Source: Malacoraja senta (Eukaryota). Taken from it: a DNA stretch of 63,812 nt. The position numbers and the translations under genes were made by a program. How positions within the stretch are numbered: position 1 is the stretch's first letter; each line of letters starts with the position of its first letter. Below, in pieces: positions 5,241-61,050 of this stretch. The notes under the pieces were generated by a model. That model had not been told where the DNA came from. It did no database searches and saw only the letters and a program-made list of their open reading frames with translations. The stretch lies in the NCBI GenBank assembly GCA_038087875.1, contig CM075981.1, positions 66,588,189 to 66,652,000 on the forward strand. The letters run 5' to 3'.

Positions 5241-5973
5241 GTAACTAGAAAATGGTCACAGCATAGGAAGAGCTTGGGAAAGGGAATGTGCATAATGATA
5301 AAAATCAACACAAAAATATTGATTATTATATCAAGAAGAAGATTACGCTGAGGAATGTGGTCTCCTTAGAAATTAATAATACTGACATTACAAACAAAAA
5401 TCATGAAAAGTGGGCAAATTGAATAGGTACTGCATGAGTATCCGTAGCAAAGGAAAAGTCTACTATTTCACATATCACAAGGAAAGTTGAGTCAGATACA
5501 GAGTTCACTGGAATTAATTTGTGAAATGACAATAATAATAATAATGAAGAAATTTGCAGTGCCATAACGATAAAAAAAGCACTGGTTAATCCACACACAG
5601 AGCACACAGAGACCCAGTTTTCAGCACCAAACCTTGGGATTAATATAATGGAGCATATTTGCCAGAAAGATGCCTGGACTCCAAGGGTAAAATTATGAGG
5701 AAATCTATAACCAGTGGTATTCACTGGAGTTTAGGTTAAGGTTTATGTTTTATTCCAAGATAGATGAATGGAAAACCGATCAGACAAAGAGAGAGAAGGC
5801 ACCTCCGTTGGTTGGGGGACTGGAACCTGGGGACATGCAGTTAAAATGAAAGCCAGCCCTTGAAGGAGAATCCAAGAATCACAAACCGACTGTAGATTTT
5901 TGGAATCTTATCCACAAACTGCAAGTGACTCTAGGTCATTGTTGATTTTAAATTTGAGACTGATCAGTTTGGT

Positions 5974-6285
5974 TATAGAGTCATAGAGCTAAACAACATG
6001 GAAACAGGCTCTTCTGCCCAACTCATAAGGTGCCTTCCTGAGCTAGTCCCATTTACCTGCGTTTAGCCCATATCCCTCTAAGCCTTTCCTATTTATGTAC
6101 CTGCCCAAATGTCATTTAAACATTGTAATTACACTGATTTCTACCACTTTCTCTGTCAGCCCTTCACACAATTGCCCCATAGGTCCTTTAGTTTTAGAAT
6201 TCCCTATCTTAGAAAAAAGACCGTGATCTTTCACATTATCTATTTCCCCCTCTGTAAGGTCACCCTCATCCTCATTCCCTCCGGT
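5974..6285 (-). mobile_element. CR1 LINE 3' end
   Basis: ATAGAGTCATAGAG tail followed by the CR1 3' UTR (GGAAACAGGC..GCCCAACTC..TAGTCCCATTT). Confidence 0.8.
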
Positions 6286-8477: not shown

Positions 8478-9890
8478 CAGTAATGAAGGTTTCGTTTGTG
8501 CCAACTGATTGTTTGAGCAGCCCAGCAGAACACACGGCTGCTGATGAGACTTTACAATTGCTGTCTGCAGCCTTCCGGCGTGGCTGGCCGGACAAACAAC
8601 ACAACACCCCGCTCGCAATCCGCCCCTACTTCCTGGTTTGCGACGAACTAGTATTACAGGACGGAATTATAGTCAAGGGCCACAAGGCAGTGGACCCAGC
8701 AACCCTCCGGGACAAATACTTTGACGACATCCACAGGGGTCACCCCGGCGTGGAGGCAACCCTCCAAAGTGCGCAAAGCAAAGTTTTACTGGTCCAGAAT
8801 GACCATATACATACGAGAAAAAAAAGAAGTTTGCGCCGTCTGCAAAAGCCTGACGCCACATCAGCAAAAGCAGCCTTTACTGCTGCACCCAGTCCCTCCT
8901 CTCCCGTGGTCCACTTTAGCCACCGACATCTTCGAGTGGCATGGGACACACTATCTGGTTCTTGTTGACTCTTACTCGGGCTGGTTCGAAATTGATTTAC
9001 TTCAAACCACTACTTCTGAAGCAGTTATCGAGAAGTTGCAGTGTCACCTCTCCGTGCACGGCTCCCCTGCACGTATCCAGTCTGACAACGGAAGACAGTT
9101 CACCAGCCAAGCTTTTAAAGACTTTGCAAAACAATGGGACTTTCAACATATTAACAGCAGCCCTGAGTTCCCACAGTCCAACGGACTCGCCGATCGTGCT
9201 GTCCGGAGTGCAAAACAACTCATGGAGCAGTCATACCTTGCCAAATCAGACGTGTACCTAGACTTGCTCAACCTAAGGAATATTGCACGGGATCCCATAC
9301 TGGGTTCTCCAGCCCAATAACTGATGTCTCGTCAAACCCGTGCTCCTCTGCCTGTGTCCCAGCAGCTTTTACAGCCACAAGTAACATCTACAAGTAACAT
9401 CAGAAGCAACTACAATTCAAACGTGGCATGCAGAAACGCTTCTTCGACAAATCCAGCAAGCCACATAAACCTTTCGCACATGGACAAGTGGTCCATCTCC
9501 AGACAAACAAGGGCTATGCACGTCTGGGACACATCTACGGCCCCGCCAAAGAGCCGCGCTCTTATCTGATCGAAGCGGACGGAGTCATCTACAGCGGCAA
9601 CCGTCAACATGTCCTTCCAGTGAAGGAACCGCTTCCTGCGACTCCATATCCTGATGTCTCATGTTTTGTATACCCTCCCACGGTCGGTCCCGCGTCCCCA
9701 CTGCCACCTATCGTTTCCACCGCGGTCTAGCTTGCCTACCTCGTCACCCTCCCTGCCTGTCGAGTCGCCGGTCGTTTCCCCATTTCCCTCCCCGGTATCT
9801 TCTCCAGTGAAAGGAGGTGAGGCGGACTCGTACCGCACACGGGCCGGACGGGTTTGCAGGCCACCCGTTAGATATGGTGATTTTGTGTAA
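8478..9890 (+). pseudogene. Gypsy/Ty3 (K02A2.6-like) pol remnant: integrase, frameshifted
   Basis: HHCC finger (IHRGHPG..CAVC), core LATDIFEW..LVLVDSYSGWFE..IQSDNGRQF..PQSNGLADRAV (catalytic E reads D), C-terminal YRTRAGRVCRPPVRY; split over several frames with a stop at 9318-9320. Confidence 0.93.
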
Positions 9891-22303: not shown

Positions 22304-22438
22304 GGCACGATGGCACAGCGGTATAATTGTAAATTGACCCTAGTGTGTGTAGGGTAGTGTTAGTGTGTGGGGATCGCTGGTCGGCGCGGACTTGGTGGGC
22401 CACAGGACCTATTTCCGCACTGTATCTCTAAACTAAAC
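22304..22438 (+). mobile_element. HE1-type SINE with large internal deletion
   Basis: Head GGCACGATGGCACAGCGGTA joined directly to the tail AATTGTAAATTGACCCTAG..TGTATCTCTAAACTAAAC. Confidence 0.8.
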
Positions 22439-24929: not shown

Positions 24930-25224
24930 GTGCACAGTAGCGCAACAATAGAGTTGCTGCCTTACAGTGCCAGAGACTTGGGCTTGATCCTGACTATGGG
25001 TGCTGTCTATACAGAGTTTGTACGTTCTCCTCGTGACCACATGGGTTTCCTCTGGGTTCTCTCCGGATTCCTCCCACATTCCAAATTCATGCAGGTTTTT
25101 ACATTCATTGGCTTCTGTAAATCATCCTTGGTGTGTAGGATAGAATTAGTGTATGGATGATCACTGGTCGGCATGGTCTCGGTGGGCTGAAGGGCCTGTT
25201 TTCACACTGTATCTTTAAACTAAA
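24930..25224 (+). mobile_element. HE1-type tRNA-derived SINE
   Basis: tRNA-like head, GAGTTTGTACGTTCTCC..TGGGTTTCC..CTCCCACATTCCAAA core, CR1-like tail GAAGGGCCTGTTT..TGTATC. Confidence 0.88.
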
Positions 25225-27187: not shown

Positions 27188-27354
27188 TGTCATGTTATGA
27201 CTAAGGTGGATGTTAGTGGAACAGGTAAGATGTGTGTCAGTGGGATAACTAAGTTGGTTGCTCGTGGAATAACATAGAACTAGAGTGATCCATGATAGGT
27301 GCAGACTCACTAGGCCGATGGCCTGTTTCCATGCTGTACCTTCCAATCAATTCA

Positions 27355-29958: not shown

Positions 29959-30359
29959 ACCTTAATGTCAATACGTTTCTGAATTTATTGAGTACAAAGT
30001 TATCTATTCCCATTTTTTGTATCAAAGCTTCTCAGCGTGTGATACCATATTGCAGACAATTTTGCCAAATTTCAGGCTACCATCGTGTTGTGAACGTATG
30101 ACTGTACTCTATACCTGTCCGATCCATGTACCTGACCAAATGTTTCTTCAAAGTTACGATAGTTACGAAATGCAAAAAAGGTTGCCGACCCCTGGACTAA
30201 ACCAAATCCTTGATCCTATCCTGCCAGCCTTTGTGTTCATTGATATTTCATTCACAATATTAGGATTTCGTAGAGGGAGAGAGAGAGAGATAGGTTGAAT
30301 GAATGAATGAAAGAAAGAAAAAGGTTGCTCAACAAATAATTAGAGATCACAAGAAAGAA

Positions 30360-30507
30360 ACAAGAGAATATATATATGTGTGTTATATATTTATGTACGT
30401 ATATGTCACACATATATATATATATGCATCATATATATATAATGAATATATATGTGTTTATATATATAAGAAACTAGAAAAATATATTTGTGTGTTATAC
30501 AATTATA
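30360..30507. repeat. (TA)-rich low-complexity repeat
   Basis: Degenerate TA runs leading into the gap. Confidence 0.8.
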
Positions 30508-30656
30508 NNNNNNNNNNNNNNNNNNNNNNNNNNNNNNNNNNNNNNNNNNNNNNNNNNNNNNNNNNNNNNNNNNNNNNNNNNNNNNNNNNNNNNNNNNNNN
30601 NNNNNNNNNNNNNNNNNNNNNNNNNNNNNNNNNNNNNNNNNNNNNNNNNNNNNNNN
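30508..30656. other. Assembly gap
   Basis: Run of N. Confidence 0.99.
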
Positions 30657-31972: not shown

Positions 31973-32263
31973 GGGTGGCACTGTGGCGCAGCAGTAGAGT
32001 TGCGGCCTTACACACTTACAGAGACCCGGGTTCGATACTTACTACGGATACTGTCTGTACGGAGTTTGTACGTTCTCCCCATGACCACGTTGGTTTTCTT
32101 CAAGCTCTTTTGTTTCCTTCCATACCCCAAAGATGTTTGTTTCCTCCCATACCCCAGGTTTGTAGGTCGCTAGTGTGTGTAGCATAGTGTTAATGTTCGG
32201 GGATTTGCTGATGGGCCAAAGGGCTTCTTTCCACGCTGTATCGCTTAACTAAACTAAACTAAA
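31973..32263 (+). mobile_element. HE1-type SINE
   Basis: GGTGGCACTGTGGCGCAGCAGTAGAG head, GGTTCGATAC B box, (AACTA)n tail. Confidence 0.9.
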
Positions 32264-34582: not shown

Positions 34583-34877
34583 GGTGGCACAATAGCACGG
34601 TGGTAGATTTGCTGCCTTTCAGCGCCAGAGACCGGGTTCGAACCTGAGTACAAGTGCTGTCTGTCCGGAGTTTGTGCATTCTCTCTGTGACCACGTGGGT
34701 TTTCTCCGGGTGCTCCAGTTTTCTCCCACATTCCAAAGACGTCCAGCTTTGTAGGTTAATTGTCTTTGGTAAAAATTGTAAATTATCCCTGGCGTGTAAG
34801 GAATCGGTGGATGGCGTGGACTCGGTGGGCTGAAGGGCCTGTTTCTACATTGTATCTCTAAACTAAACTAAACTAAA
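34583..34877 (+). mobile_element. HE1-type SINE
   Basis: GGTTCGAACC B box, V-type core, (CTAAA)n tail. Confidence 0.9.
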
Positions 34878-36224: not shown

Positions 36225-36425
36225 AGTGTATGAAGGAACTGCAGATGCTGGTTTAAACCAAAGAAAAATGCTGGAGTAACTCAACAGGACAGGCAACATC
36301 TCGAGAGAGAAGGAATGGGTGACGTTTCGAGTCGACACCTTTCTTCAGGTCCAGAAACGTCACCCATTCCTTCTCTCCAGAGATGCTTGCTGTCTCGCTG
36401 AGTTACTCCAGCATTTTGTATCTAT
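36225..36425. mobile_element. Short Penelope-derived fold-back element with 13-bp TSD and hammerhead-like core
   Basis: CAGTGA(A/G)TGGAAC at 36212-36224 and 36426-36438; long inverted arms; minus strand 36321-36348 reads CTGAAGA-AAGGTGTCGACTC-GAAACGTC. Confidence 0.85.
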
Positions 36426-36499
36426 CAGTGAGTGGAACTGATGAAGTCTTGGAACCTGGCACAGCCGCTTCAAGACAGGCGGGACAGGAGTAGAGAAGG

Positions 36500-38500
36500 A
36501 TAAGAGGGAGAGGGTTGGTTTTGTGTGGAGTGGATAGGTGGGGATGTGTGCTGGTGGGTGCAAGGTGTGTGAGAGGGGTTAGGGCGAGTGCGTGGGGTGA
36601 AGGATGTTTGTGGGAGGGGCTTTGGGGTGGGAGGGAGTGGGAGGGATGGGGTGGGTATGATGGGAGATGGGGGTTGGGTGTGAATGCATGTTGGTGGGGG
36701 AGGGTGTGCGGAGTGTGTATTTATGTGTGGGGGAGCTGGGACGGGTGTGTATGTATGGAGAGGGCTTGAATGGGGGGGGGTGGACGAAGGAGGGGATGTG
36801 GGGTGGATGTGTGGGAAGAGTGGATGTAGGTGGGGAAGGGGATATGTGTGAGGGGGAGGGGATGTTGGCGTGGGGGTGGTGAGGAGGGAGGGAATGGGGA
36901 CAGGGGAGGCAGGGTTGGGGAATAGGGTTTGTGTGGGTGGTGGGGGAGGGACTGTGGTGTGGTGGTGTGAGATGGGGGTGGAGGAGGTAGGGATAGAGGG
37001 GATGTGTGGTGAGGTATTGGAATGGAGGGCGTGTGGGAGGTGGGGCAGGGGGTTGTATGATGGTGGGAGGTTGGGACGGAGGAGGGGGGGACAGAGATGG
37101 TGTGTGATGAGGTATGGGGAATGGTGTGTAGGTGGTGGGGAAGAGTGTGGGGATGGGTGATGGAGCAGCGGTGGTGTAAGCAAGGAATGGGTGAGGGTTG
37201 GGATGGAGATAGGAATGCTTGAGGGTTGAGGGAAGGGTTTGTGATGGGAGGGGAGAGTGTGGGGATGGGTGGGGGAGCAAGGGTGGGATATGTTTGGGGT
37301 TGAGATAATGTGTGGGAGAGATGGGATAGGGAGGGATAGAATGGAAAATGGAGGGAAGAATTAGGAAGAGCTGGTTGGGAGAGGACGGGGATCGATGTGG
37401 GAATGGGAGAGGAGTTGGATGCTGGCAGGGAAAGGTGAAGGTGGGTGGAGGGATTTATGTGTGTCCTTCAAGGGTGTGTGAGTGGGGAGGGAGCTGTTTT
37501 AATCGGGGATGGGGTTGCATGTGGGGTGGTGCGTGAACCGGTTGGGAGAGAGCAGTGTGGGTGGAGATCTGTGGGTCAGGGTGGGAGGCGTGTGGGTGGG
37601 GAGTGTGTGAGTGGGCCAGGGGTGGTGGAGAAAGCGGTGTGGGTGGGGAGCATATGGGGGTGGTTTAACTATGGTAAGTAAGGTAGTGTTGTTCAGGGGT
37701 GTGTGGTGGGAGGAAGCTTGTACATGGGGTGGGGAGTGTGTTTGAGGGTGGGGTTTGGGGACTGGTGGGGTGGGGACTTGGGGAAGATGTGGGGAGGGGA
37801 GTGTGATGGGTGGGGATTGAGTTGTGAGTGTTTGTAGGGTGGTGGGTTGGGTTTGCGTGGGTCTGAGTGGTGAGTAAGGTATTGGGTACGGCTGTGGGTT
37901 TGGAGGGTTGGGTGCATGTGTTAGTACGGAGGTTAGTAGGTGGGGTATGGGTGTGTGGGATGGGCGTGTGTGATGGGTGTGTATGGGATAGGTGGGGTAT
38001 GGGTGTGTGGGATGGGTGTGTGTGGGGTATGGGTGGGGTATGGGTGTGTGGGATGGGCGTGTGTGATGGGCATGTGTGGGGTAGGTGGGGTATGGGTGTG
38101 TGGGTAGACAAGAGTGCTGGAGAAACTCAGCGGGTGCAGCAGCATCTATGGTGCGAAGGAAATAGGCAACATTTTGGGCCGAAACCCTTCTGTGGGATGG
38201 GCGTGTGTGATGGGCGTGTGTGGGGTAGGTGGGGTATGGGTGGGGTATGGGTGTGTGGGATCGACTTGTGTGGGGTAGGTGGGGTATGGGATGGGTGTGT
38301 GTGGGGTAGGTGGGGTATGGGTGTGTGGGATCGGCGTGTGTGGGGTGGCGTGTTGGCAGGGGGTTGGGTATTGTGGGAGCGAGTGTAGTGTGAGGGTCTG
38401 ATCTGCGTGTGGGGTTGGAGTGGGCTGCGGGTGGGTGTACGGTTGTGGATGATGTGTACGTGTGCATGGATGAGTGTGAGGTTGTGCTGGGGTTGGGAAG
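36500..38500. repeat. 2-kb G/T-rich low-complexity tract with GGTGGGGTATGGGTGTGTGGGAT minisatellite
   Basis: Plus strand almost lacks C; repeated units at ~37935-38350, interrupted by a Penelope piece at ~38104-38190. Confidence 0.9.
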
Positions 38501-39300
38501 TGGGTAAAAGTTAAACCATCTCTGTTAAAGGATTTCAAATATTATCACTGATAATTCTTTATTTGTACGCATTAACACACATTAACAGTTAAAGTTAAAA
38601 CCCGATCATGCAGGAAGGATCGTTGCCACTGGAAAAAGAACGTGAACGCATTTCTCTGAAAGCCATTTTTATGAAAGATAGCTCATTCATCTTCTTTTGG
38701 AACCAACAACGTGATTTCTGCACTGAATTCCGATTGACAGTTGCTTCAGATTCATTGATAAATCTAATTGACAAAAATATATATTCCTCCTTCTCTTGTT
38801 TATTTCCTCTTTTATCTCCTAATCCTGTCACGCCTCTCCCTCTCCTTCCTCCCCCATTCTTGTTTCTTCTTTCCTTCACACTCCACAATTTACCCGTTCC
38901 TCTCATTCCTCCCTCTGCTCAGGGATGGCAGAGAGCTGCAGGAGGGGGTGATGCTGCCTCAGGTCCTGGGTTCAAACCTCACCTTGGGTTCCCTCCATAT
39001 GGAGTTTGCACATTCCCCCTGTAATCAAATGATTTTCCCCAGCTGCTCGGCTTTCCTCCCACATCCTGGCAGATTAATTGGCTGCAATAAACTACTGTAG
39101 GCATATGGCAGTGGTATCAGAAGGGATTGGTGAGTGTGAGGGAGTGGATCACACCGTGGGGGAGAGAATAATGGGAATGCTCTGAGAGATGCATGAATTC
39201 AATGGGTTGAATATCCTCTTCCAATGTGGCAAGGATTTTTTTCCCCTTCTTTTTGTCTACTCTCTCTCTCTCTCTCTCTCTTAGAATGTCAGTTATAATT

Positions 39301-39615
39301 AGGTGGCACAGTGGTGCAGCGGTGGAGTTGCTGCCATACAGCGCTTGCAGCACCGGAGACCCGTGTTCGATCCCGACTACGGGTGCTGTCTGTATGGAGT
39401 TTGTACGTTCTCCCCGTGACCATGTTTTCTCCGAGATCTTCACTTTCCTCCCACACCCAAAGACGTGCAGGTTTGTAGGTTAATTGGCTTGGAATAATTG
39501 TAGATTGTCCATAGTGTGTGTAGGATAGTGTTAATATGCAGGGATTGCTGGTCTGCACGGACTTGGTGGGCCGAAGGGCCTGTTTCCACGCTGTATCTCT
39601 AAATTAAACTAAACT
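39301..39615 (+). mobile_element. HE1-type SINE
   Basis: GGTGGCACAGTGGTGCAGCGG head, GTTCGATCC B box, CR1-type tail. Confidence 0.92.
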
Positions 39616-41775: not shown

Positions 41776-42184
41776 NNNNNNNNNNNNNNNNNNNNNNNNN
41801 NNNNNNNNNNNNNNNNNNNNNNNNNNNNNNNNNNNNNNNNNNNNNNNNNNNNNNNNNNNNNNNNNNNNNNNNNNNNNNNNNNNNNNNNNNNNNNNNNNNN
41901 NNNNNNNNNNNNNNNNNNNNNNNNNNNNNNNNNNNNNNNNNNNNNNNNNNNNNNNNNNNNNNNNNNNNNNNNNNNNNNNNNNNNNNNNNNNNNNNNNNNN
42001 NNNNNNNNNNNNNNNNNNNNNNNNNNNNNNNNNNNNNNNNNNNNNNNNNNNNNNNNNNNNNNNNNNNNNNNNNNNNNNNNNNNNNNNNNNNNNNNNNNNN
42101 NNNNNNNNNNNNNNNNNNNNNNNNNNNNNNNNNNNNNNNNNNNNNNNNNNNNNNNNNNNNNNNNNNNNNNNNNNNNNNNNNNNN
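41776..42184. other. Assembly gap
   Basis: Run of N. Confidence 0.99.
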
Positions 42185-45499: not shown

Positions 45500-45792
45500 G
45501 GGAAGATACAGCGTGGAAACAGGCCCTTCGGCCCACCGAGTCCATGCCAACCATTAATCACCTGTTCACACTAGATCCATGTTATCCCACTTTTGCATCA
45601 ACTCTTTACACACCAGGGGCAATTTACAGAGACCAATCAACCTGCAAACCTGCACGTCTTTGCGATGTGGGAGGAAACTGGAACACTTCAAGTAAAACAA
45701 CATGCAAACTCTGACAACATCTGAGGTCAAGATCGAACCTGGATCTCTAACATTGTGAAGTAGCAGTTCTACCAGTTGTGCCACTGTGCCAC
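45500..45792 (-). mobile_element. HE1-type SINE
   Basis: GATACAGCGTGGAAACAGGCCCTTCGGCCCAC tail; GATCGAACC B box reversed. Confidence 0.88.
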
Positions 45793-46355: not shown

Positions 46356-47272
46356 AATATCTGGAAATCTTTATTCCAGATAGAGTGAATGTAGAACAGA
46401 TTTGGTAAGAATATTTATCTTGTCACCTGGCATCGGAAGCAGCCCCTGCCATTATTATGCCAATCTCAAATCCTCCATTATCCTGTTGATTCAAATAGGA
46501 TTCAAGCCAGAGAGGCTCCGTGCATGGATGAGCACTTTGCTATTCACTTGGAATGTGCACAAGACTGCAGCCAACCACTTCGACTCTGGTTGTGTGCACC
46601 GTAACACCGCTTTTACAATATCCAACATAGCCAATGACTGGGACTTGTCACAAGGTCCAAAACTCCCCGTGATTTAGTATGGTGCGATTGATAAATACTG
46701 CAGTCAATTTACACAGCAACTGGATTACTGACCGGTTAATCTGCTTTATGACTGGATGTTTCCAGGGAAGCATCTAAGGCAAGACTGCAGGAGTACTACC
46801 CATTCCCCTCTGTCCAATGCTATGGCATCTTTAAATTAGTGGAAGGGGTGCTCTTCCCAACATGGTGTCTCTTGGCAATTGAACACTCCCCCAGAGCTGA
46901 GCTGGGGGAATATTCAAACAGAGAACTCCAACAGCACCTGCCAAGCCTACAAGCCAGTGAGGACAAGGACAACAGTGCATGGTGCATGGGAACATTCAGA
47001 TCCTCTGTAAGTCACACACCATCTGTCTTGGAAATACTGTCTATCATCCAATGGATCTATCTCTTAGTACTCCCAACTCAACAGCATTATGAGAGCACCT
47101 TCAAGAAGTATCACACATCATCTCGAGGATAATTATGGTTAGGCAATAAATTGTGACCTGACCAGCAATCTCCAGATCCCATAGTCAAACTTTATTCTAG
47201 ATTTTTGCTGCTTTGCATAACAATAAGATCAATGCCATAGTATTTCAGTACTCAACACCAAGATAAGCTTTA

Positions 47273-47562
47273 TTTAGTTTAGAGATACAGCATGGAAACA
47301 GGCTCATTGGCCCACTGAGTCCACACCGACCAACAATCGGCTAGTTCTATCCTACACATTAGGGACGATTTACAGAAGCCAATTAACCTACAAACCTGCA
47401 CGACCTGTGGAAAATGGGAGGAAACTGGAGCACCCAGAGAAAACCTACGCGGTCACAGGGAGATTGTACAAATTCCATCCAGACAGCATCCGTCGTCAGG
47501 ATCGAACACGAGTTTCTGGCACCATAGGGCAGCAACTCTACCGTTGCACCACCATGCTGCCC
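47273..47562 (-). mobile_element. HE1-type SINE
   Basis: Full head (GGGCAGCATGGTGGTGCAACGGTAGAG), GTTCGATCC B box, tail TGTATCTCTAAACTAAA. Confidence 0.92.
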
Positions 47563-47566
47563 TATT

Positions 47567-47723
47567 GCACGAACGCAGTCCCCCACTACCACAAAATTTG
47601 CAGTCACGTATCCCGCATTTGAGGACATCACCGGTGTCAGCACACCCGCGGGGTGCAATGGGATAACCTCGTCCCGGGAGAATCGCCTTCTTGATCACGG
47701 TCTCCCCACTGCCAGGTAAGTAT
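47567..47723 (-). pseudogene. RNU1: U1 snRNA copy lacking its last ~9 nt (probable retrocopy)
   Basis: Minus strand ATACTTACCTGGCAG.., loop I GATCAAGAAG, loop II ATTGCAC, Sm site AATTTTGTG, GTAGTGGGGGACTGCGTTCGTGC. Confidence 0.95.
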
Positions 47724-50700
47724 CTTTACCCTTACTATTAAATCCCTCCCAAACCTCAACAAAGCAGTCCCTGCAACGGTTCGATATCCACTCTCCTTGA
47801 ACTCAGGATAATACACTGGTTCACTGCTTCTTGCTTCCACCATTCATATGTCAGTCATTACATGTGTATTTTAGCAATTTTGTCCCCTTTCAAAACATCA
47901 GACCATGCGTCCCAATGCTGTCTCTCCCTCCCTCCTGCTTAGTGATATCGCTATTGTTCATTAAATACTGGATATTCCTTTATGTAAATAGAAATACTAA
48001 AAGGTAGAGGCACGAAATTAAGGGTTAATAGCATCTTGCTTTTTTTTAATTTTCCTTTACTCTGGAGATCTGGAGGATAACTATCACAGTTAGTGGAGGG
48101 TACAGGTGGGCAGGAAATCACTCCTCATCACCCTCCATGACGATAATCCTGACTAATGTTGGCAGAGAACAAATGTTGTCTGGGAGACTGGAGAGGAATC
48201 TCTAACCTTCCTGTACAGCTGCAGGTTATTCACATCCACCTGATAGGTATTCAGTTGCACATCTCGTCCGACAGGTCGCCAACAAGCACCATATGATCAT
48301 GATGCTTGCTTGAAATGTAACCCCCCCCCCCCCCTCCAGAGTGAGACACAGTGGCTCAGGTTAAGAGCATTTTCCTCTCTTTATTTCTAATCACTAGGAT
48401 ATGGAGGCAGGGGTGGGGAAAGCAGAAGGGATAAAGACTCCGTCCCTGACAAGCCTCCATAATCCTGACTCAAGGAGCTCAAGCCATCTCAGGGTGGAGT
48501 CCCTCTATCGTTGAGGGAGCAGCCTTTAGGCTTTGCCTTCCACCTTGTCTGAGCACAGTTGGTGTGAGTGAGCTGAATGCGCGGACGATGACGTGCACAA
48601 ACAGACACCCACTGCAGTGAAGCAATCAATGTCTTTCACCAGCCTGTCAGCTCCTCGCGTGGACTGGTTATGGACACACGGAGCAGAGCACCAGAAACAC
48701 AAGTCTTCACAGAACCATTTCATTAGTATCAATTATGCTCCATACACTGTTGATAAGCTGACACATTAGACCACGAACCTCTCAACAGTACAGATAATCA
48801 GATGTAGTTCTTTTCCCCATTGTTCATTCGACCATTCACACAACCAGGCATCAACTTATAAGTAAATCAGTACCAGGCCACTCATCGGGAATCAACATCT
48901 TTGTTTCCTTGCTGCCTTCACCTCTCAGATTGTTTAATATTTCTTTGTGAGCAGCAGTCCTGATGCTGCCTCCAGTAGCGTGGTTATTGATAGCTGAGTT
49001 CTTCAATCGCCCTCAGGTTAATGGCCGTCTCTGTTGATATTAATGAGAGGGTGTGGGACAGGATAGGTAGTCATTAACCCAAGGTTGATGATGCTGGCAT
49101 CAAATCTATTGTCTCATCATCCTTAATAACTCTCTCTGAAAGAGAGCATTCTCAATTTGAATTTGAAGGTATCCCAAAAGCCAACAGAAATGAACATAGA
49201 TAATATTTATATTAATAATTCATTCTTGGTTCCTGTTTAAAGGTGGTTGATGTGAAGTTAAAATAGTTGTTATGTAGTGTTTTTTAATATCTCAAGGCCA
49301 TTGAGAAAATAAAACAGGTGGGAGGAGAGGAGCAAAAGAAATGCTGAAGGTCCATTTCTTCACCCTTGAATGGTGAGGGATGGGAGATTAGGTTTTGTAA
49401 AGAGAACAAGCAGATAATGGGAAGAGTTGGAGTGGGTGGGGGTGGATAATGGGGAGAGCTGTCAGAGGTCTGGCTAAAGACTGCATCACCATTAGAGCAC
49501 AAGAGGGAGAGAAAAGGATGAACAATAGACTCAATTCACTAATAAAAGAGGTCATAAGTTGCCATTGGAAAAGAGCAGGCAGCCACAACAGATGTAAGAA
49601 ATGTGAAGTCAGCTCTGAGGAATAGAGCTCAGCCCAATGTAGACAGAATAGACAGCCCAATGTAGAAATATTGGCCTGCACTTAAGTTATTGCAAACCAA
49701 AACAGAAGACCTGATCACACAGAAGGTTGCTGCACCATCCATTCACTTTGCAAGTAGTGCTTAAAACCAGCTCTGATGCTTTGCCAAGTTATTATGGATT
49801 TGCAGGAAATGGCTTACTGCAATTCAAAACAGTTCAGAGGCAGTATGAGTCCAAACAGAATTCTCTACAAGTGGTCAGTTTCAGAAGAGCTCTCAGTGGC
49901 GTGTCCCTTGTTAAGATCACCTGTTTAGAAATTCCATAATAGTCAACGTGGTGTTATGCAGGCCCAACCATGTGGGTCAGGAATTGCTTTGAATGTTAGA
50001 TATTACTGAAAATTACACTTATTTCAGTGTCTGAAATTTTGACCTGCAATTATTTGTAGTGGTTTGGGTGCAGGGTAAGGAGATGACCAGCATTGGTGGA
50101 AGGGCTGGGGTTGAGAGCAGGGGGGGTGCGGGTTATTAAAGAAGATCATAAGGTCAGGAGTGCAGGCAATAATTTGGGTTGGTGGATTCTGTGTATGTCC
50201 AATGCCTTGGGAAGTTGGGGCTTGGGGTGAAGCGAAGAATGGGGAGTGGCCCAATAAAGAGCTGCTGGGAGAGTGGAAACGTCCAAAGGTGGTTATTCTC
50301 GGACAATACGAGTACGGTTTTACTCAAAAACAGCATTGCACTATCCTGTGACCTGTGCATCAGGGCACAGTGGTGACTCATTCAGGGGAGTGCTCAGGTT
50401 AATTTCCAAAAGTGATGCAAAATGGATTGCATTGCATTTCCAGACGTGAATAGTGAATTTCAGTTGTATATAAAGCTCATGCAATGTGGTCATTTTGGAG
50501 CATTACTGTCCTGGAAACGAGGGTCTTTGAGCATTTCAGGTCAGCAACACTGGACTTGGGACACTTGGCCTGCACCCCTCCACAACCCCACCCCCCCCTC
50601 CCCTCCCCTCGCAGGGAGAGCTCTATAAAGTCAACCGCATAAGAATTGCTGTATTTAGATTCATTTAGCAGGCTATGGTTAAGTTGCAGATGGTGCAATA

Positions 50701-53180: not shown

Positions 53181-53506
53181 AGGCGGCACAGTGGCGCAGC
53201 GGTAGAGTTGCTGCCTTACAGCAAAAGCAGCGCCGGAGACCTGGGTTCGATCACGACTACGGGCGCTGTCTGTACGGAGTTTGTACGTTCTCCCCATGAC
53301 CTGCGTGGGTTTTCTCCGAGATCTTCGGTTTCCTCCCACACTCCAAAGACGTACAGGTTTGTAGGTTGATTGACTTGGTATAAACGTAAATTGTCCCTAG
53401 TGGGTGTAGGATAGTGTTGATCCACGATAGTAGGGATTGTCGGTCGGCACAGACCCGGTGGGCCGAAGGGCCTGTTTCTGCGCTGTATCTCTGAACTAAA
53501 CTAAAC
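53181..53506 (+). mobile_element. HE1-type SINE (young, CpG-rich)
   Basis: GGCGGCACAGTGGCGCAGCGGTAGAG head, GGTTCGATC B box, (AACTA)n tail. Confidence 0.93.
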
Positions 53507-60569: not shown

Positions 60570-61050
60570 GTCATAGTCAGAGTCATACAACCTGGAAACA
60601 GGCTCGGCCCAACCCATCCATGCCAACCAATATGCCCCATCTTAACTAGTCCCATTTGCCCGCATTTGACCAATATCCCTCTAAACATTTCCTATCCTAT
60701 AGCTACCCAAGTGACTTTTAAATGATGTTATAGTACCCGCCTCAACTACCTTCTCTGACAACTCGCTCCATAAACCCATCACCCTCTGAGTGAAAATATT
60801 GCCCCTCAAATTCGTATTACATCTTGCCCCTCTCATCTTAAGCATATGTCTTCTTATTTTTGAGTCCCCTACCCTCAGTAAAAGACTGCATTCACCCTAT
60901 CAATTCCCCTCATGATTTTACAGTTATAACATCACCCCTCAGCCTCCTGTGCTCCAAGGAATAAAATCATAGCCTGCCCAACCATTCTCGATAGCTCAGC
61001 CCCTCAAGTCCTGGCAACATTCTCATAAATCTTCTCTGCACTATTTCCAT
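60570..61050 (-). mobile_element. CR1 LINE 3' portion
   Basis: Collinear with 108-590. Confidence 0.88.

What the first reader, a model, noticed from the sequence alone, without database searches (positions are those of the whole stretch)
47268..47728. U1 snRNA-HE1 SINE chimera: candidate U1-headed retroposon
Seen: on the minus strand, U1 starts at its exact first nucleotide (ATACTTACCTGG) and runs 157 nt. It lacks the terminal TCCCCTG strand of stem-loop IV and, after ~4 nt (AATA), continues into a complete same-sense HE1 SINE. The missing U1 end is not found after the SINE tail. CTTTA lies on both sides of the whole unit (47268-47272, 47724-47728), a possible short TSD but weak evidence. 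Established: snRNA-LINE chimeras arise by template switching or RNA ligation (U6-L1), and U1-derived SINEs (SINEU) are known from crocodilians. Inference: this is one CR1-mediated chimeric retrocopy, or a U1-headed SINE subfamily in chondrichthyans. On the plus strand it supplies a perfect 5' splice site (CAGGTAAGTAT).
Basis: partly seen in the sequence, partly recalled or inferred. Interest (0 to 1): 0.7.

Follow-up and report, generated by a model that had tools for sequence, protein, structure and literature searches.

The report
Dead U1 copy fused to SINE
A decayed copy of the spliceosomal U1 RNA sits head-to-tail on a complete skate SINE, most likely because a reverse transcriptase jumped from the SINE RNA onto a U1 RNA; it looks like an old, single, non-functional fossil of a kind already described in mammals, platypus and lizard, with no sign of a U1-headed SINE family.

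Summary
On the minus strand, Rfam finds U1 at 47723-47563 (94 bits, gathering 69.5). U1 starts at its nucleotide 1, runs 157 nt and lacks the 3' strand of stem-loop IV. After 2-4 unassigned bases it continues into a same-sense, 5'-complete tRNA-derived SINE (47562-47273) with a (CTAAA)n-type tail. TAAAG does lie on both sides, but the 3' copy sits in register with the SINE's tail repeat, so it is weak evidence for a target-site duplication.

Best reading (about 0.65): one old chimeric retrocopy. The SINE's partner LINE copied the SINE RNA to its 5' end, then switched template to U1 snRNA.

Four skate species carry U1 against the right flank. Three of them also show the SINE tail against the left flank. 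No empty or half-filled site was seen.

No U1-headed SINE family is supported. Few U1-like contigs exist, and the closest U1 paralogue does not continue into a SINE. The SINE's internal promoter would also start transcription downstream of U1.

U6-SINE chimeras made by stringent LINEs (platypus Mon-1, AnolisSINE2) and human U1/U2-Alu chimeras are already published. This is a new member of a known kind. The scan earlier noted U1-headed Tx1 LINEs in this genome; those are a different structure.

The parts
47724..47728 (-). TAAAG directly upstream of U1 nucleotide 1; possible 5' copy of a short target-site duplication or priming microhomology
   Evidence: Read from the sequence. It resembles the SINE tail unit TAAAC.
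47567..47723 (-). U1 snRNA-derived pseudogene, nucleotides 1 to about 155-157; 5' end exact, 3' strand of stem-loop IV missing
   Evidence: Rfam RF00003, 94 bits against 69.5 gathering. Broken pairs and changed invariant positions mark it as dead.
47563..47566 (-). AATA: 2-4 nt assignable neither to U1 nor firmly to the SINE. Either non-templated addition or the 5' leader of the SINE transcript.
   Evidence: Three other SINE copies also have 'ta' before the GG head. Paralogue joints reach 47562-47564.
47273..47562 (-). Complete tRNA-derived SINE (HE1-like): A-box-like and B-box motifs, conserved body, start of the tail
   Evidence: Alignment with six window copies. 83-85% identity to a crude consensus. 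Head-to-tail SINE-SINE joints 47562->47273 in four species mark its ends.
47268..47280 (-).
   Evidence: The loose-end consensus at 47273 shows that other copies continue with TTTAG repeats on the plus strand.
47713..47723 (+). CAGGTAAGTAT, consensus 5' splice-site sequence formed by the reverse complement of the U1 5' end
   Evidence: Read from the sequence. No RNA run was available to test use.

Best explanation
This is one ancient chimeric retrocopy. Inferred steps: the LINE that mobilises this SINE family recognised the SINE RNA's 3' tail, primed at a nicked target that resembles the tail repeat (TAAAG), and copied the SINE RNA to its very 5' end. There it added, or copied from a short transcript leader, 2-4 bases. 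It then switched template onto a U1 snRNA, landing inside the 3' strand of stem-loop IV. It copied U1 to its capped 5' end, and the cDNA was joined to the chromosome. Shown: the result is U1(1-157)-filler-SINE-tail in one orientation. The copy has decayed since, predates the split of at least four skate species, and shows no feature of a working gene. U1 genes use an external promoter, and the SINE's internal pol III promoter would start transcription downstream of U1. The chimera could therefore not copy its own U1 head.
For: 1. Architecture shown directly: same sense, U1 starting exactly at nucleotide 1, SINE starting at the family's first bases, only 2-4 bases between.
2. No U1 remainder follows the SINE tail or occurs elsewhere in the window.
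3. All four skate species laid have U1 with the right flank; A, E and I also have the SINE tail with the left flank. No intermediate state was seen.
4. Decay of the two halves is of the same order: U1 has 7 of 67 near-invariant positions changed (my count), and the SINE is 15-17% from a crude consensus.
5. Chance adjacency is unlikely. The window has about 6 complete SINE heads in 63 kb. My arithmetic gives about 5e-4 for a same-sense head within 10 nt of a given point.
6. Precedent exists. U6 chimeras with Mon-1 and AnolisSINE2, made by stringent L2-type LINEs, have TSDs of only 1-9 bp. Human U1/U2-Alu chimeras are cited. A fungal LINE makes such chimeras too (abstract).
7. Stringent LINEs cannot take up a bare snRNA, so a LINE or SINE 3' part is expected behind such a retrocopy.
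8. SINE-to-SINE head-to-tail joints occur in all four species. They fit end-of-template jumps, though insertion into existing tails would also explain them.
Against: Only one locus was seen. The TSD is 5 bp and overlaps the tail repeat, so it does not prove that the two parts entered together. No empty or half-filled orthologue was available, so a two-step history is not excluded. The switch landed inside U1, not at its 3' end, and U1 is otherwise 5'-complete, whereas most platypus U6-L2 chimeras are 5'-truncated. A weak PSE-like ACCGT lies at about -57, where a U1 gene promoter element would sit (recognised from memory). The partner LINE was not found in the window. In the relatives no contig crosses the junction itself.
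Confidence: 0.65

Rival explanations
1. Two independent events. In one version a 3'-truncated U1 retropseudogene (tailless type), or a decayed DNA-level U1 gene copy, was already there, and a SINE later inserted at or just inside its 3' end, deleting the last 9 nt. In the other version the U1 copy landed right in front of an existing SINE.
For: 3'-truncated tailless snRNA retropseudogenes are a known class. This SINE is dense, with 7 copies in 63 kb. The TSD does not discriminate. AATA before the SINE and AAATA within the tail could be read as a tiny TSD of the SINE alone. A weak PSE-like motif lies at about -57.
Against: It needs a same-sense, full-length SINE head within a few bases of the U1 end, about 5e-4 per U1 locus from the window's SINE density. 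No U1 remainder or 3'-box-like motif follows the tail, and no octamer lies around -220 (motifs judged by eye from memory). No species shows an intermediate.
Confidence: 0.25
2. It is a member or relic of a U1-headed composite retroposon family in skates (SINEU-like), that is, a chimera that went on to amplify.
For: SINEU families with U1/U2 heads exist in crocodilians and grew by repeated 5' addition of snRNA sequence. Unchecked scan notes report U1-headed Tx1 LINEs in this same genome. Copies more than about 20% diverged from this one would not have been laid, and human-like contigs are dropped silently.
Against: At 47632 only 5-14 contigs per genome show the paralogues' base. At 47651 only the locus and one paralogue are present. 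Where the contig is long enough to tell (862 nt, run X21), the paralogue's match stops at the U1 end and does not run on into SINE sequence. No other U1 fragment lies next to the six other SINE heads in the window. The SINE's A/B boxes would start transcription downstream of U1, so the head would not be inherited (inference from established pol III biology).
Confidence: 0.05
3. It is an assembly or chimeric-read artefact that joins a U1 sequence to a SINE.
For: SINE heads are repeat boundaries where assemblies can misjoin.
Against: A Logan contig of the same species covers 47533-48500 without a difference, spanning the U1 end, the filler and 30 nt of SINE. Relatives have U1 and the SINE tail against the same unique flanks.
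Confidence: 0.02

Closest known systems
U6-SINE chimeras made by stringent LINEs: U6-Mon-1 (platypus, L2) and U6-AnolisSINE2 (lizard), Doucet et al. 2015, PMC4476161
   Same: A spliceosomal snRNA copy is fused in sense to the 5' side of a tRNA-type SINE that carries its LINE's tail. Both are explained by template switching, and TSDs are small or hard to see.
   Different: Here the snRNA is U1 (pol II, capped), not U6. U1 is 5'-complete and 3'-truncated, whereas most platypus U6 parts are 5'-truncated. The host is a cartilaginous fish, the SINE is HE1-like, and only one locus was seen.
Human snRNA-L1/Alu chimeric retrogenes (Buzdin 2002/2003, Garcia-Perez 2007, as cited in PMC4494074; U6/L1 by RNA ligation, PMC6789731)
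   Same: The layout is snRNA at the 5' end and a retroelement 3' part behind it, in the same orientation. One U1 and two U2 copies combined with Alu fragments were reported.
   Different: Those are made by relaxed, poly(A)-dependent L1 and have 7-15+ bp TSDs. The skate unit ends in a pentanucleotide repeat tail. RtcB-type ligation does not explain the 2-4 extra bases or a triphosphate SINE 5' end (inference).
SINEU families of crocodilians (Kojima 2015, PMC4494074)
   Same: U1-derived sequence lies at the 5' end of a short retroposon. Template switching is proposed for adding snRNA heads.
   Different: SINEU families are multicopy with shared junctions, lack a tRNA-type promoter, target Mariner-N4_AMi and are moved by Tx1-Mar. 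None of this is seen here.
Tailless (3'-truncated) snRNA retropseudogenes (Schmitz 2004; PMC5322556)
   Same: The U1 copy is 5'-complete and 3'-truncated without an A tail.
   Different: Those are flanked directly by 8-35 nt TSDs and are tied to therian L1. Here the truncation point abuts a SINE, and no TSD surrounds U1 alone.
U1-headed Tx1 LINEs noted earlier in this skate genome (scan notes s1-140168, s1-140444, unchecked by me)
   Same: Same genome, with U1-derived sequence at the 5' end of a retroelement.
   Different: Those carry only the first 50-56 nt of U1 on a Tx1 LINE and recur in several copies. Here 157 nt of U1 sit on a SINE with a different tail.

Membership tests
U1 spliceosomal RNA (Rfam RF00003) | Covariance-model score at or above the gathering threshold | tested here: met
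   94 bits against 69.5, E 3e-22.
U1 spliceosomal RNA (Rfam RF00003) | Intact four stem-loops and a working gene context (PSE, 3' box) | tested here: not met
   The 3' strand of stem-loop IV is absent and about 6 other pairs are non-canonical. No convincing PSE, octamer or 3' box was seen by eye. It is U1-derived, not a U1 gene.
HE1 / V-SINE (tRNA-derived SINE of sharks and rays) | tRNA-derived head with A and B boxes | tested here: inconclusive
   B-box-like GTTCGATCC and an A-box-like motif are readable. ARAGORN and Rfam call no tRNA.
HE1 / V-SINE (tRNA-derived SINE of sharks and rays) | Sequence match to the published HE1 consensus and V domain; 3' tail shared with the HER1 LINE | not testable with these tools
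   No reference sequence was on hand, and Ogiwara 2002 is not held. The literature pairs HE1 with HER1. No LINE RT was found in the window. The name HE1 rests on recollection.
HE1 / V-SINE (tRNA-derived SINE of sharks and rays) | Highly repeated, dispersed copies with defined ends | tested here: met
   There are 7 copies in the window. About 70,000 contigs per run were laid in four skates, with ends at 47562 and 47273.
Template-switch chimeric retrocopy (snRNA + retroelement 3' part) | Two RNA-derived parts fused in the same sense, snRNA on the 5' side, retroelement part carrying the tail that primes reverse transcription | tested here: met
Template-switch chimeric retrocopy (snRNA + retroelement 3' part) | One TSD around the whole unit | tested here: inconclusive
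   TAAAG lies on both sides, but the 3' copy is in register with the tail repeat, and another copy's tail also ends in TAAAG. TSDs of 1-9 bp are usual for such LINEs.
Template-switch chimeric retrocopy (snRNA + retroelement 3' part) | Both parts arrive together: no orthologue with only one part | tested here: inconclusive
   All four skate species have U1 at the right flank. Three (A, E, I) show the SINE tail at the left flank, and in B the left-flank contig stops at 47206. The species are only about 4-5% diverged, far younger than the insertion.
SINEU-like snRNA-headed SINE family | Many copies sharing the same head-body junction | tested here: not met
   Few U1-like contigs were found. The nearest paralogue (862-nt contig, X21) stops matching at the U1 end. 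Caveat: copies under 80% alike and human-like contigs are not seen.
SINEU-like snRNA-headed SINE family | Tx1-Mar partner and Mariner-N4 target preference | tested here: not met
   The tail is the (CTAAA)n tail of the local tRNA-SINE family, and the flanks are single-copy.

The most novel reading that the evidence does not exclude
The locus is a surviving member of an old, low-copy U1-headed composite retroposon lineage in batoids: a chimera that was transcribed from outside and amplified. That would put snRNA-headed SINEs outside crocodilians, built on a tRNA-SINE body.
Probability: 0.05. Interest if true: 0.6.

Novelty: new member of a known kind. Interest (0 to 1): 0.3.

Why it matters
If the single-event reading is right, the partner LINE of the elasmobranch HE1-type SINE can jump from the end of a SINE template onto an abundant nuclear RNA. 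That is the step long proposed for how SINEs acquire new heads. So far it has been documented for L1, L2, RTE and a fungal LINE, with only an inconclusive CR1-type case in turkey. As a single dead locus it changes little on its own. Its value is as a seed for a genome-wide census of snRNA-SINE/LINE junctions in cartilaginous fishes. The antisense U1 also places a consensus 5' splice site on the plus strand. That could matter only if a plus-strand gene is transcribed through it, which was not testable.

Tried and rejected
1. Empty-site test. Contigs of four skate organisms were laid on 46500-48500. No run on record was RNA, so junction reads in RNA could not be sought.

2. Family test through proteins. 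Two ORFs spanning the junction (81 aa and 91 aa, minus strand) were sent to the word-based protein search, hoping that gene callers had called such ORFs on skate contigs. There were no candidates. This says nothing either way.

3. Partner LINE. Pfam on 20 ORFs, including those upstream of SINE-tail-like fragments at 22328-22437, 27274-27341 and 60585-60630, found no reverse transcriptase, only LTR-type integrase at 8.5-9.3 kb.

4. U1 as a working or DNA-level gene. No octamer around -220 and no 3'-box-like motif after the tail. Only a weak ACCGT at about -57, and a 7-nt indel polymorphism among species lies inside that motif. Judged insufficient.

5. tRNA call for the SINE head: none by ARAGORN or Rfam.

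6. Other small-RNA fragments at the 5' ends of the other SINE copies: none.

7. RNA ligation as in U6/L1 was considered less likely, because of the extra bases and the triphosphate 5' end of a pol III transcript (inference).

8. Ogiwara 2002 (V-SINE paper) could not be read.

However, read laying silently omits human-like contigs, so U1 contig counts are lower bounds. The N runs (30508-30656, 41776-42184) were left untouched.
Full report
**What is there.** The minus strand of 47268-47728 was read, and the whole window was scanned against Rfam. The only family above its gathering score in 63.8 kb is U1 (RF00003), on the minus strand at 47723-47563. It scores 94 bits against a threshold of 69.5, E 3e-22. 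The hit is unchanged in a permissive rescan. The copy begins at U1 nucleotide 1, and the first 13 bases match the consensus. The five model positions forming the 3' strand of stem-loop IV are missing. By my count on the alignment, about six further pairs are non-canonical and 7 of 67 near-invariant consensus positions are changed. This is a dead U1 copy, not a gene.

**The SINE.** From 47562 down to 47273 the sequence aligns end to end with six other copies of one SINE family in the window, at 24932, 31973, 34602, 39306, 53182 and 45789-45504. Pairwise identity is 61-75%. The unit is 83-85% identical to a crude majority consensus, with 37 transitions and 11 transversions, which is in the range of the other copies. 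The unit's SINE begins with the same GGG as the consensus head, so it is 5'-complete. It has a B-box-like GTTCGATCC and an A-box-like motif, although ARAGORN and Rfam call no tRNA. The tail is a CTAAA-type pentanucleotide repeat.

- I call the element HE1-like from recollection and from the literature, which pairs HE1 of sharks and rays with the HER1 LINE. No reference sequence was available to test membership.
- No LINE reverse transcriptase lies in the window, so 'CR1-mediated' remains untested.

**The junction and the direct repeat.** AATA (47566-47563) lies between U1 and the SINE. Three other copies also have 'ta' immediately before the head, and paralogue joints reach 47562-47564. So 2-4 bases are unassigned. 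TAAAG is indeed present at 47728-47724 and 47272-47268. The 3' copy, however, occupies the position where other copies continue the tail repeat. Another copy (24932-25224) also ends its tail in TAAAG. The other copies show no clear TSDs. The repeat is therefore compatible with a short TSD or with priming microhomology, but it proves nothing. The missing U1 end is neither after the tail nor elsewhere in the window.

**Other genomes.** Runs of several coded organisms hold parts of 46900-48100. Earlier scan notes identify the genome as a skate. Contigs of four organisms were laid on 46500-48500 at 80% likeness.

| Organism (run) | Right side: U1 and unique flank | Left side: unique flank and SINE tail |
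|---|---|---|
| A, same species (X2) | 47533-48500, 0 differences; spans the U1 end, the filler and 30 nt of SINE | 46500-47295, 0 differences |
| B (X3) | contig from 47610 | contig stops at 47206, so the tail is not seen |
| E (X11) | contig from 47567 | contig runs into the tail, to 47286 |
| I (X21) | contig from 47685 | contig runs into the tail, to 47298 |

- The X2 contigs may come from the sample that was assembled.
- The flanks of B, E and I differ from the window by about 4-5%.
- All four species carry U1 at the orthologous place, and A, E and I also show the SINE tail there.
- The unit is much older than their split, and the test for an empty or half-filled site stays undecided.
- No RNA run was on record.

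**Family or one-off.** The SINE part attracts about 70,000 contigs per run. The U1 part attracts very few. At 47632, 5-14 contigs per genome carry the paralogues' base. At 47651 only the locus and one paralogue are present. That paralogue is about 81-83% alike over the whole U1 part, near single-copy, and seen in all four organisms. In X21 it lies inside an 862-nt contig, and the match stops at 47566, the U1 end, rather than running on into SINE sequence. No other small-RNA fragment sits at the head of the six other SINE copies.

- Two caveats apply.
- There is also a mechanistic argument. U1 genes depend on external promoter elements, and the SINE's internal pol III boxes would start transcription at the SINE's own first bases. 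A U1-SINE chimera would therefore not pass on its head (established knowledge, and discussed for SINEU).
- I put the family reading at about 0.05.

**Mechanism.** The architecture has five features:

- the two parts lie in the same sense;
- the snRNA is complete at its 5' end;
- the retroelement part is complete to its own 5' end;
- a few extra bases lie at the joint;
- no U1 remainder follows the tail.

This is what a reverse transcriptase produces when it runs off the end of one RNA and continues on another. The literature fits this reading. Human L1 makes snRNA-L1 and snRNA-Alu chimeras, including one U1 and two U2 cases with Alu fragments. Doucet et al. 2015 showed that stringent L2-type LINEs make U6 chimeras with L2 and with the SINEs Mon-1 (platypus) and AnolisSINE2 (lizard). 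Those chimeras have TSDs of only 1-9 bp. The same authors noted that stringent LINEs cannot take up a bare snRNA, and their CR1-type case in turkey was inconclusive. A fungal LINE does the same (abstract).

From the window's density of complete SINE heads (about 6 in 63 kb), a same-sense head within 10 nt of a given point is expected about 5e-4 of the time. Coincidence is therefore the weaker explanation per locus. Head-to-tail SINE-SINE joints (47562->47273) in all four species fit frequent end-of-template jumps, though insertion into existing tails would also explain them. The extra bases may be non-templated additions or a short 5' leader of the source SINE transcript. RNA ligation as in U6/L1 (PMC6789731) explains them less well.

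**Against, and rivals.** The evidence rests on one locus and an uninformative TSD, with no intermediate or empty orthologue. The acceptor point lies inside U1 rather than at its end. A weak ACCGT sits near -57, where a U1 promoter element would lie. There is no octamer near -220 and no 3'-box-like motif (motifs recalled from memory), and a 7-nt indel among species lies inside that motif. A two-step history remains possible, at about 0.25. It would be either a tailless 3'-truncated U1 retropseudogene or an old U1 gene copy, plus a neighbouring SINE insertion with a small deletion. An assembly artefact is unlikely, at about 0.02.

**Comparison and novelty.** The unit works like the published snRNA-SINE template-switch chimeras, and I file it as a new member of that kind. 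It is U1 rather than U6, in a cartilaginous fish, on an HE1-like SINE. It is not a SINEU. SINEU families are multicopy, are moved by Tx1-Mar and target a Mariner. The scan earlier noted U1-headed Tx1 LINEs and a U2 retrocopy in this genome. These show that snRNA sequences do get caught up with retroelements in skates, but they are different structures, and I did not check them.

**Splice site and scores.** The plus-strand consensus 5' splice site at 47713-47723 is automatic for any antisense U1, and its use could not be tested. Interest is 0.3. It is a tidy fossil and a useful seed for a census, but not surprising to a specialist.

**Housekeeping.** The N runs at 30508-30656 and 41776-42184 were left alone.

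Noticed in passing
window 36400-38550: About 2 kb of G-rich, strongly strand-skewed sequence (GC 0.55, GC skew 0.72), made of degenerate GGGT/GTGTG minisatellites with periods of 13, 26, 50 and 98. It could form G-quadruplexes on the plus strand.
   Followed up: partly
window 8483-9320 (+): ORFs with an integrase core (rve, E 9e-12) and a weak integrase zinc-binding domain. This is a fragment of an LTR retroelement.
   Followed up: partly
window 47562/47273, seen in contigs of four skate organisms: Several paralogous SINE copies are joined head-to-tail, with the SINE 5' end directly preceded by another SINE's tail and 0-4 nt or more between. Either end-to-end template jumps or a preference for inserting into tail repeats would explain this.
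   Followed up: no
window 47576-47723, as matched by contigs in runs X2, X3, X11, X21: A near single-copy U1-like paralogue, about 81-83% alike to this pseudogene over the whole U1 length, is present in all four organisms. High-depth (multicopy) U1 contigs match only the 3' half and the extreme 5' end. Its nature (variant gene or older pseudogene) is unknown.
   Followed up: no
window 47769: Relatives B and E carry a 7-nt tandem duplication (TTGCAGG on the minus strand) that is absent in A and I. It lies about 45 nt upstream of the U1 start, so the upstream flank is evolving freely.
   Followed up: no
window 30358-30463: An AT-rich palindromic stretch gives weak two-strand hits to several miRNA families, far below gathering (E 0.03-0.5). 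It lies next to the N run at 30508-30656 and is probably low complexity.
   Followed up: no
window 24932-25224, 31973-32258, 34602-34872, 39306-39613, 53182-53505 (+), 45504-45789 (-): Six further old copies of the same SINE family, five on the plus strand, with no clear TSDs. Shorter tail-only fragments lie at 22328-22437, 27274-27341, 5973-6020 and 60585-60630.
   Followed up: partly
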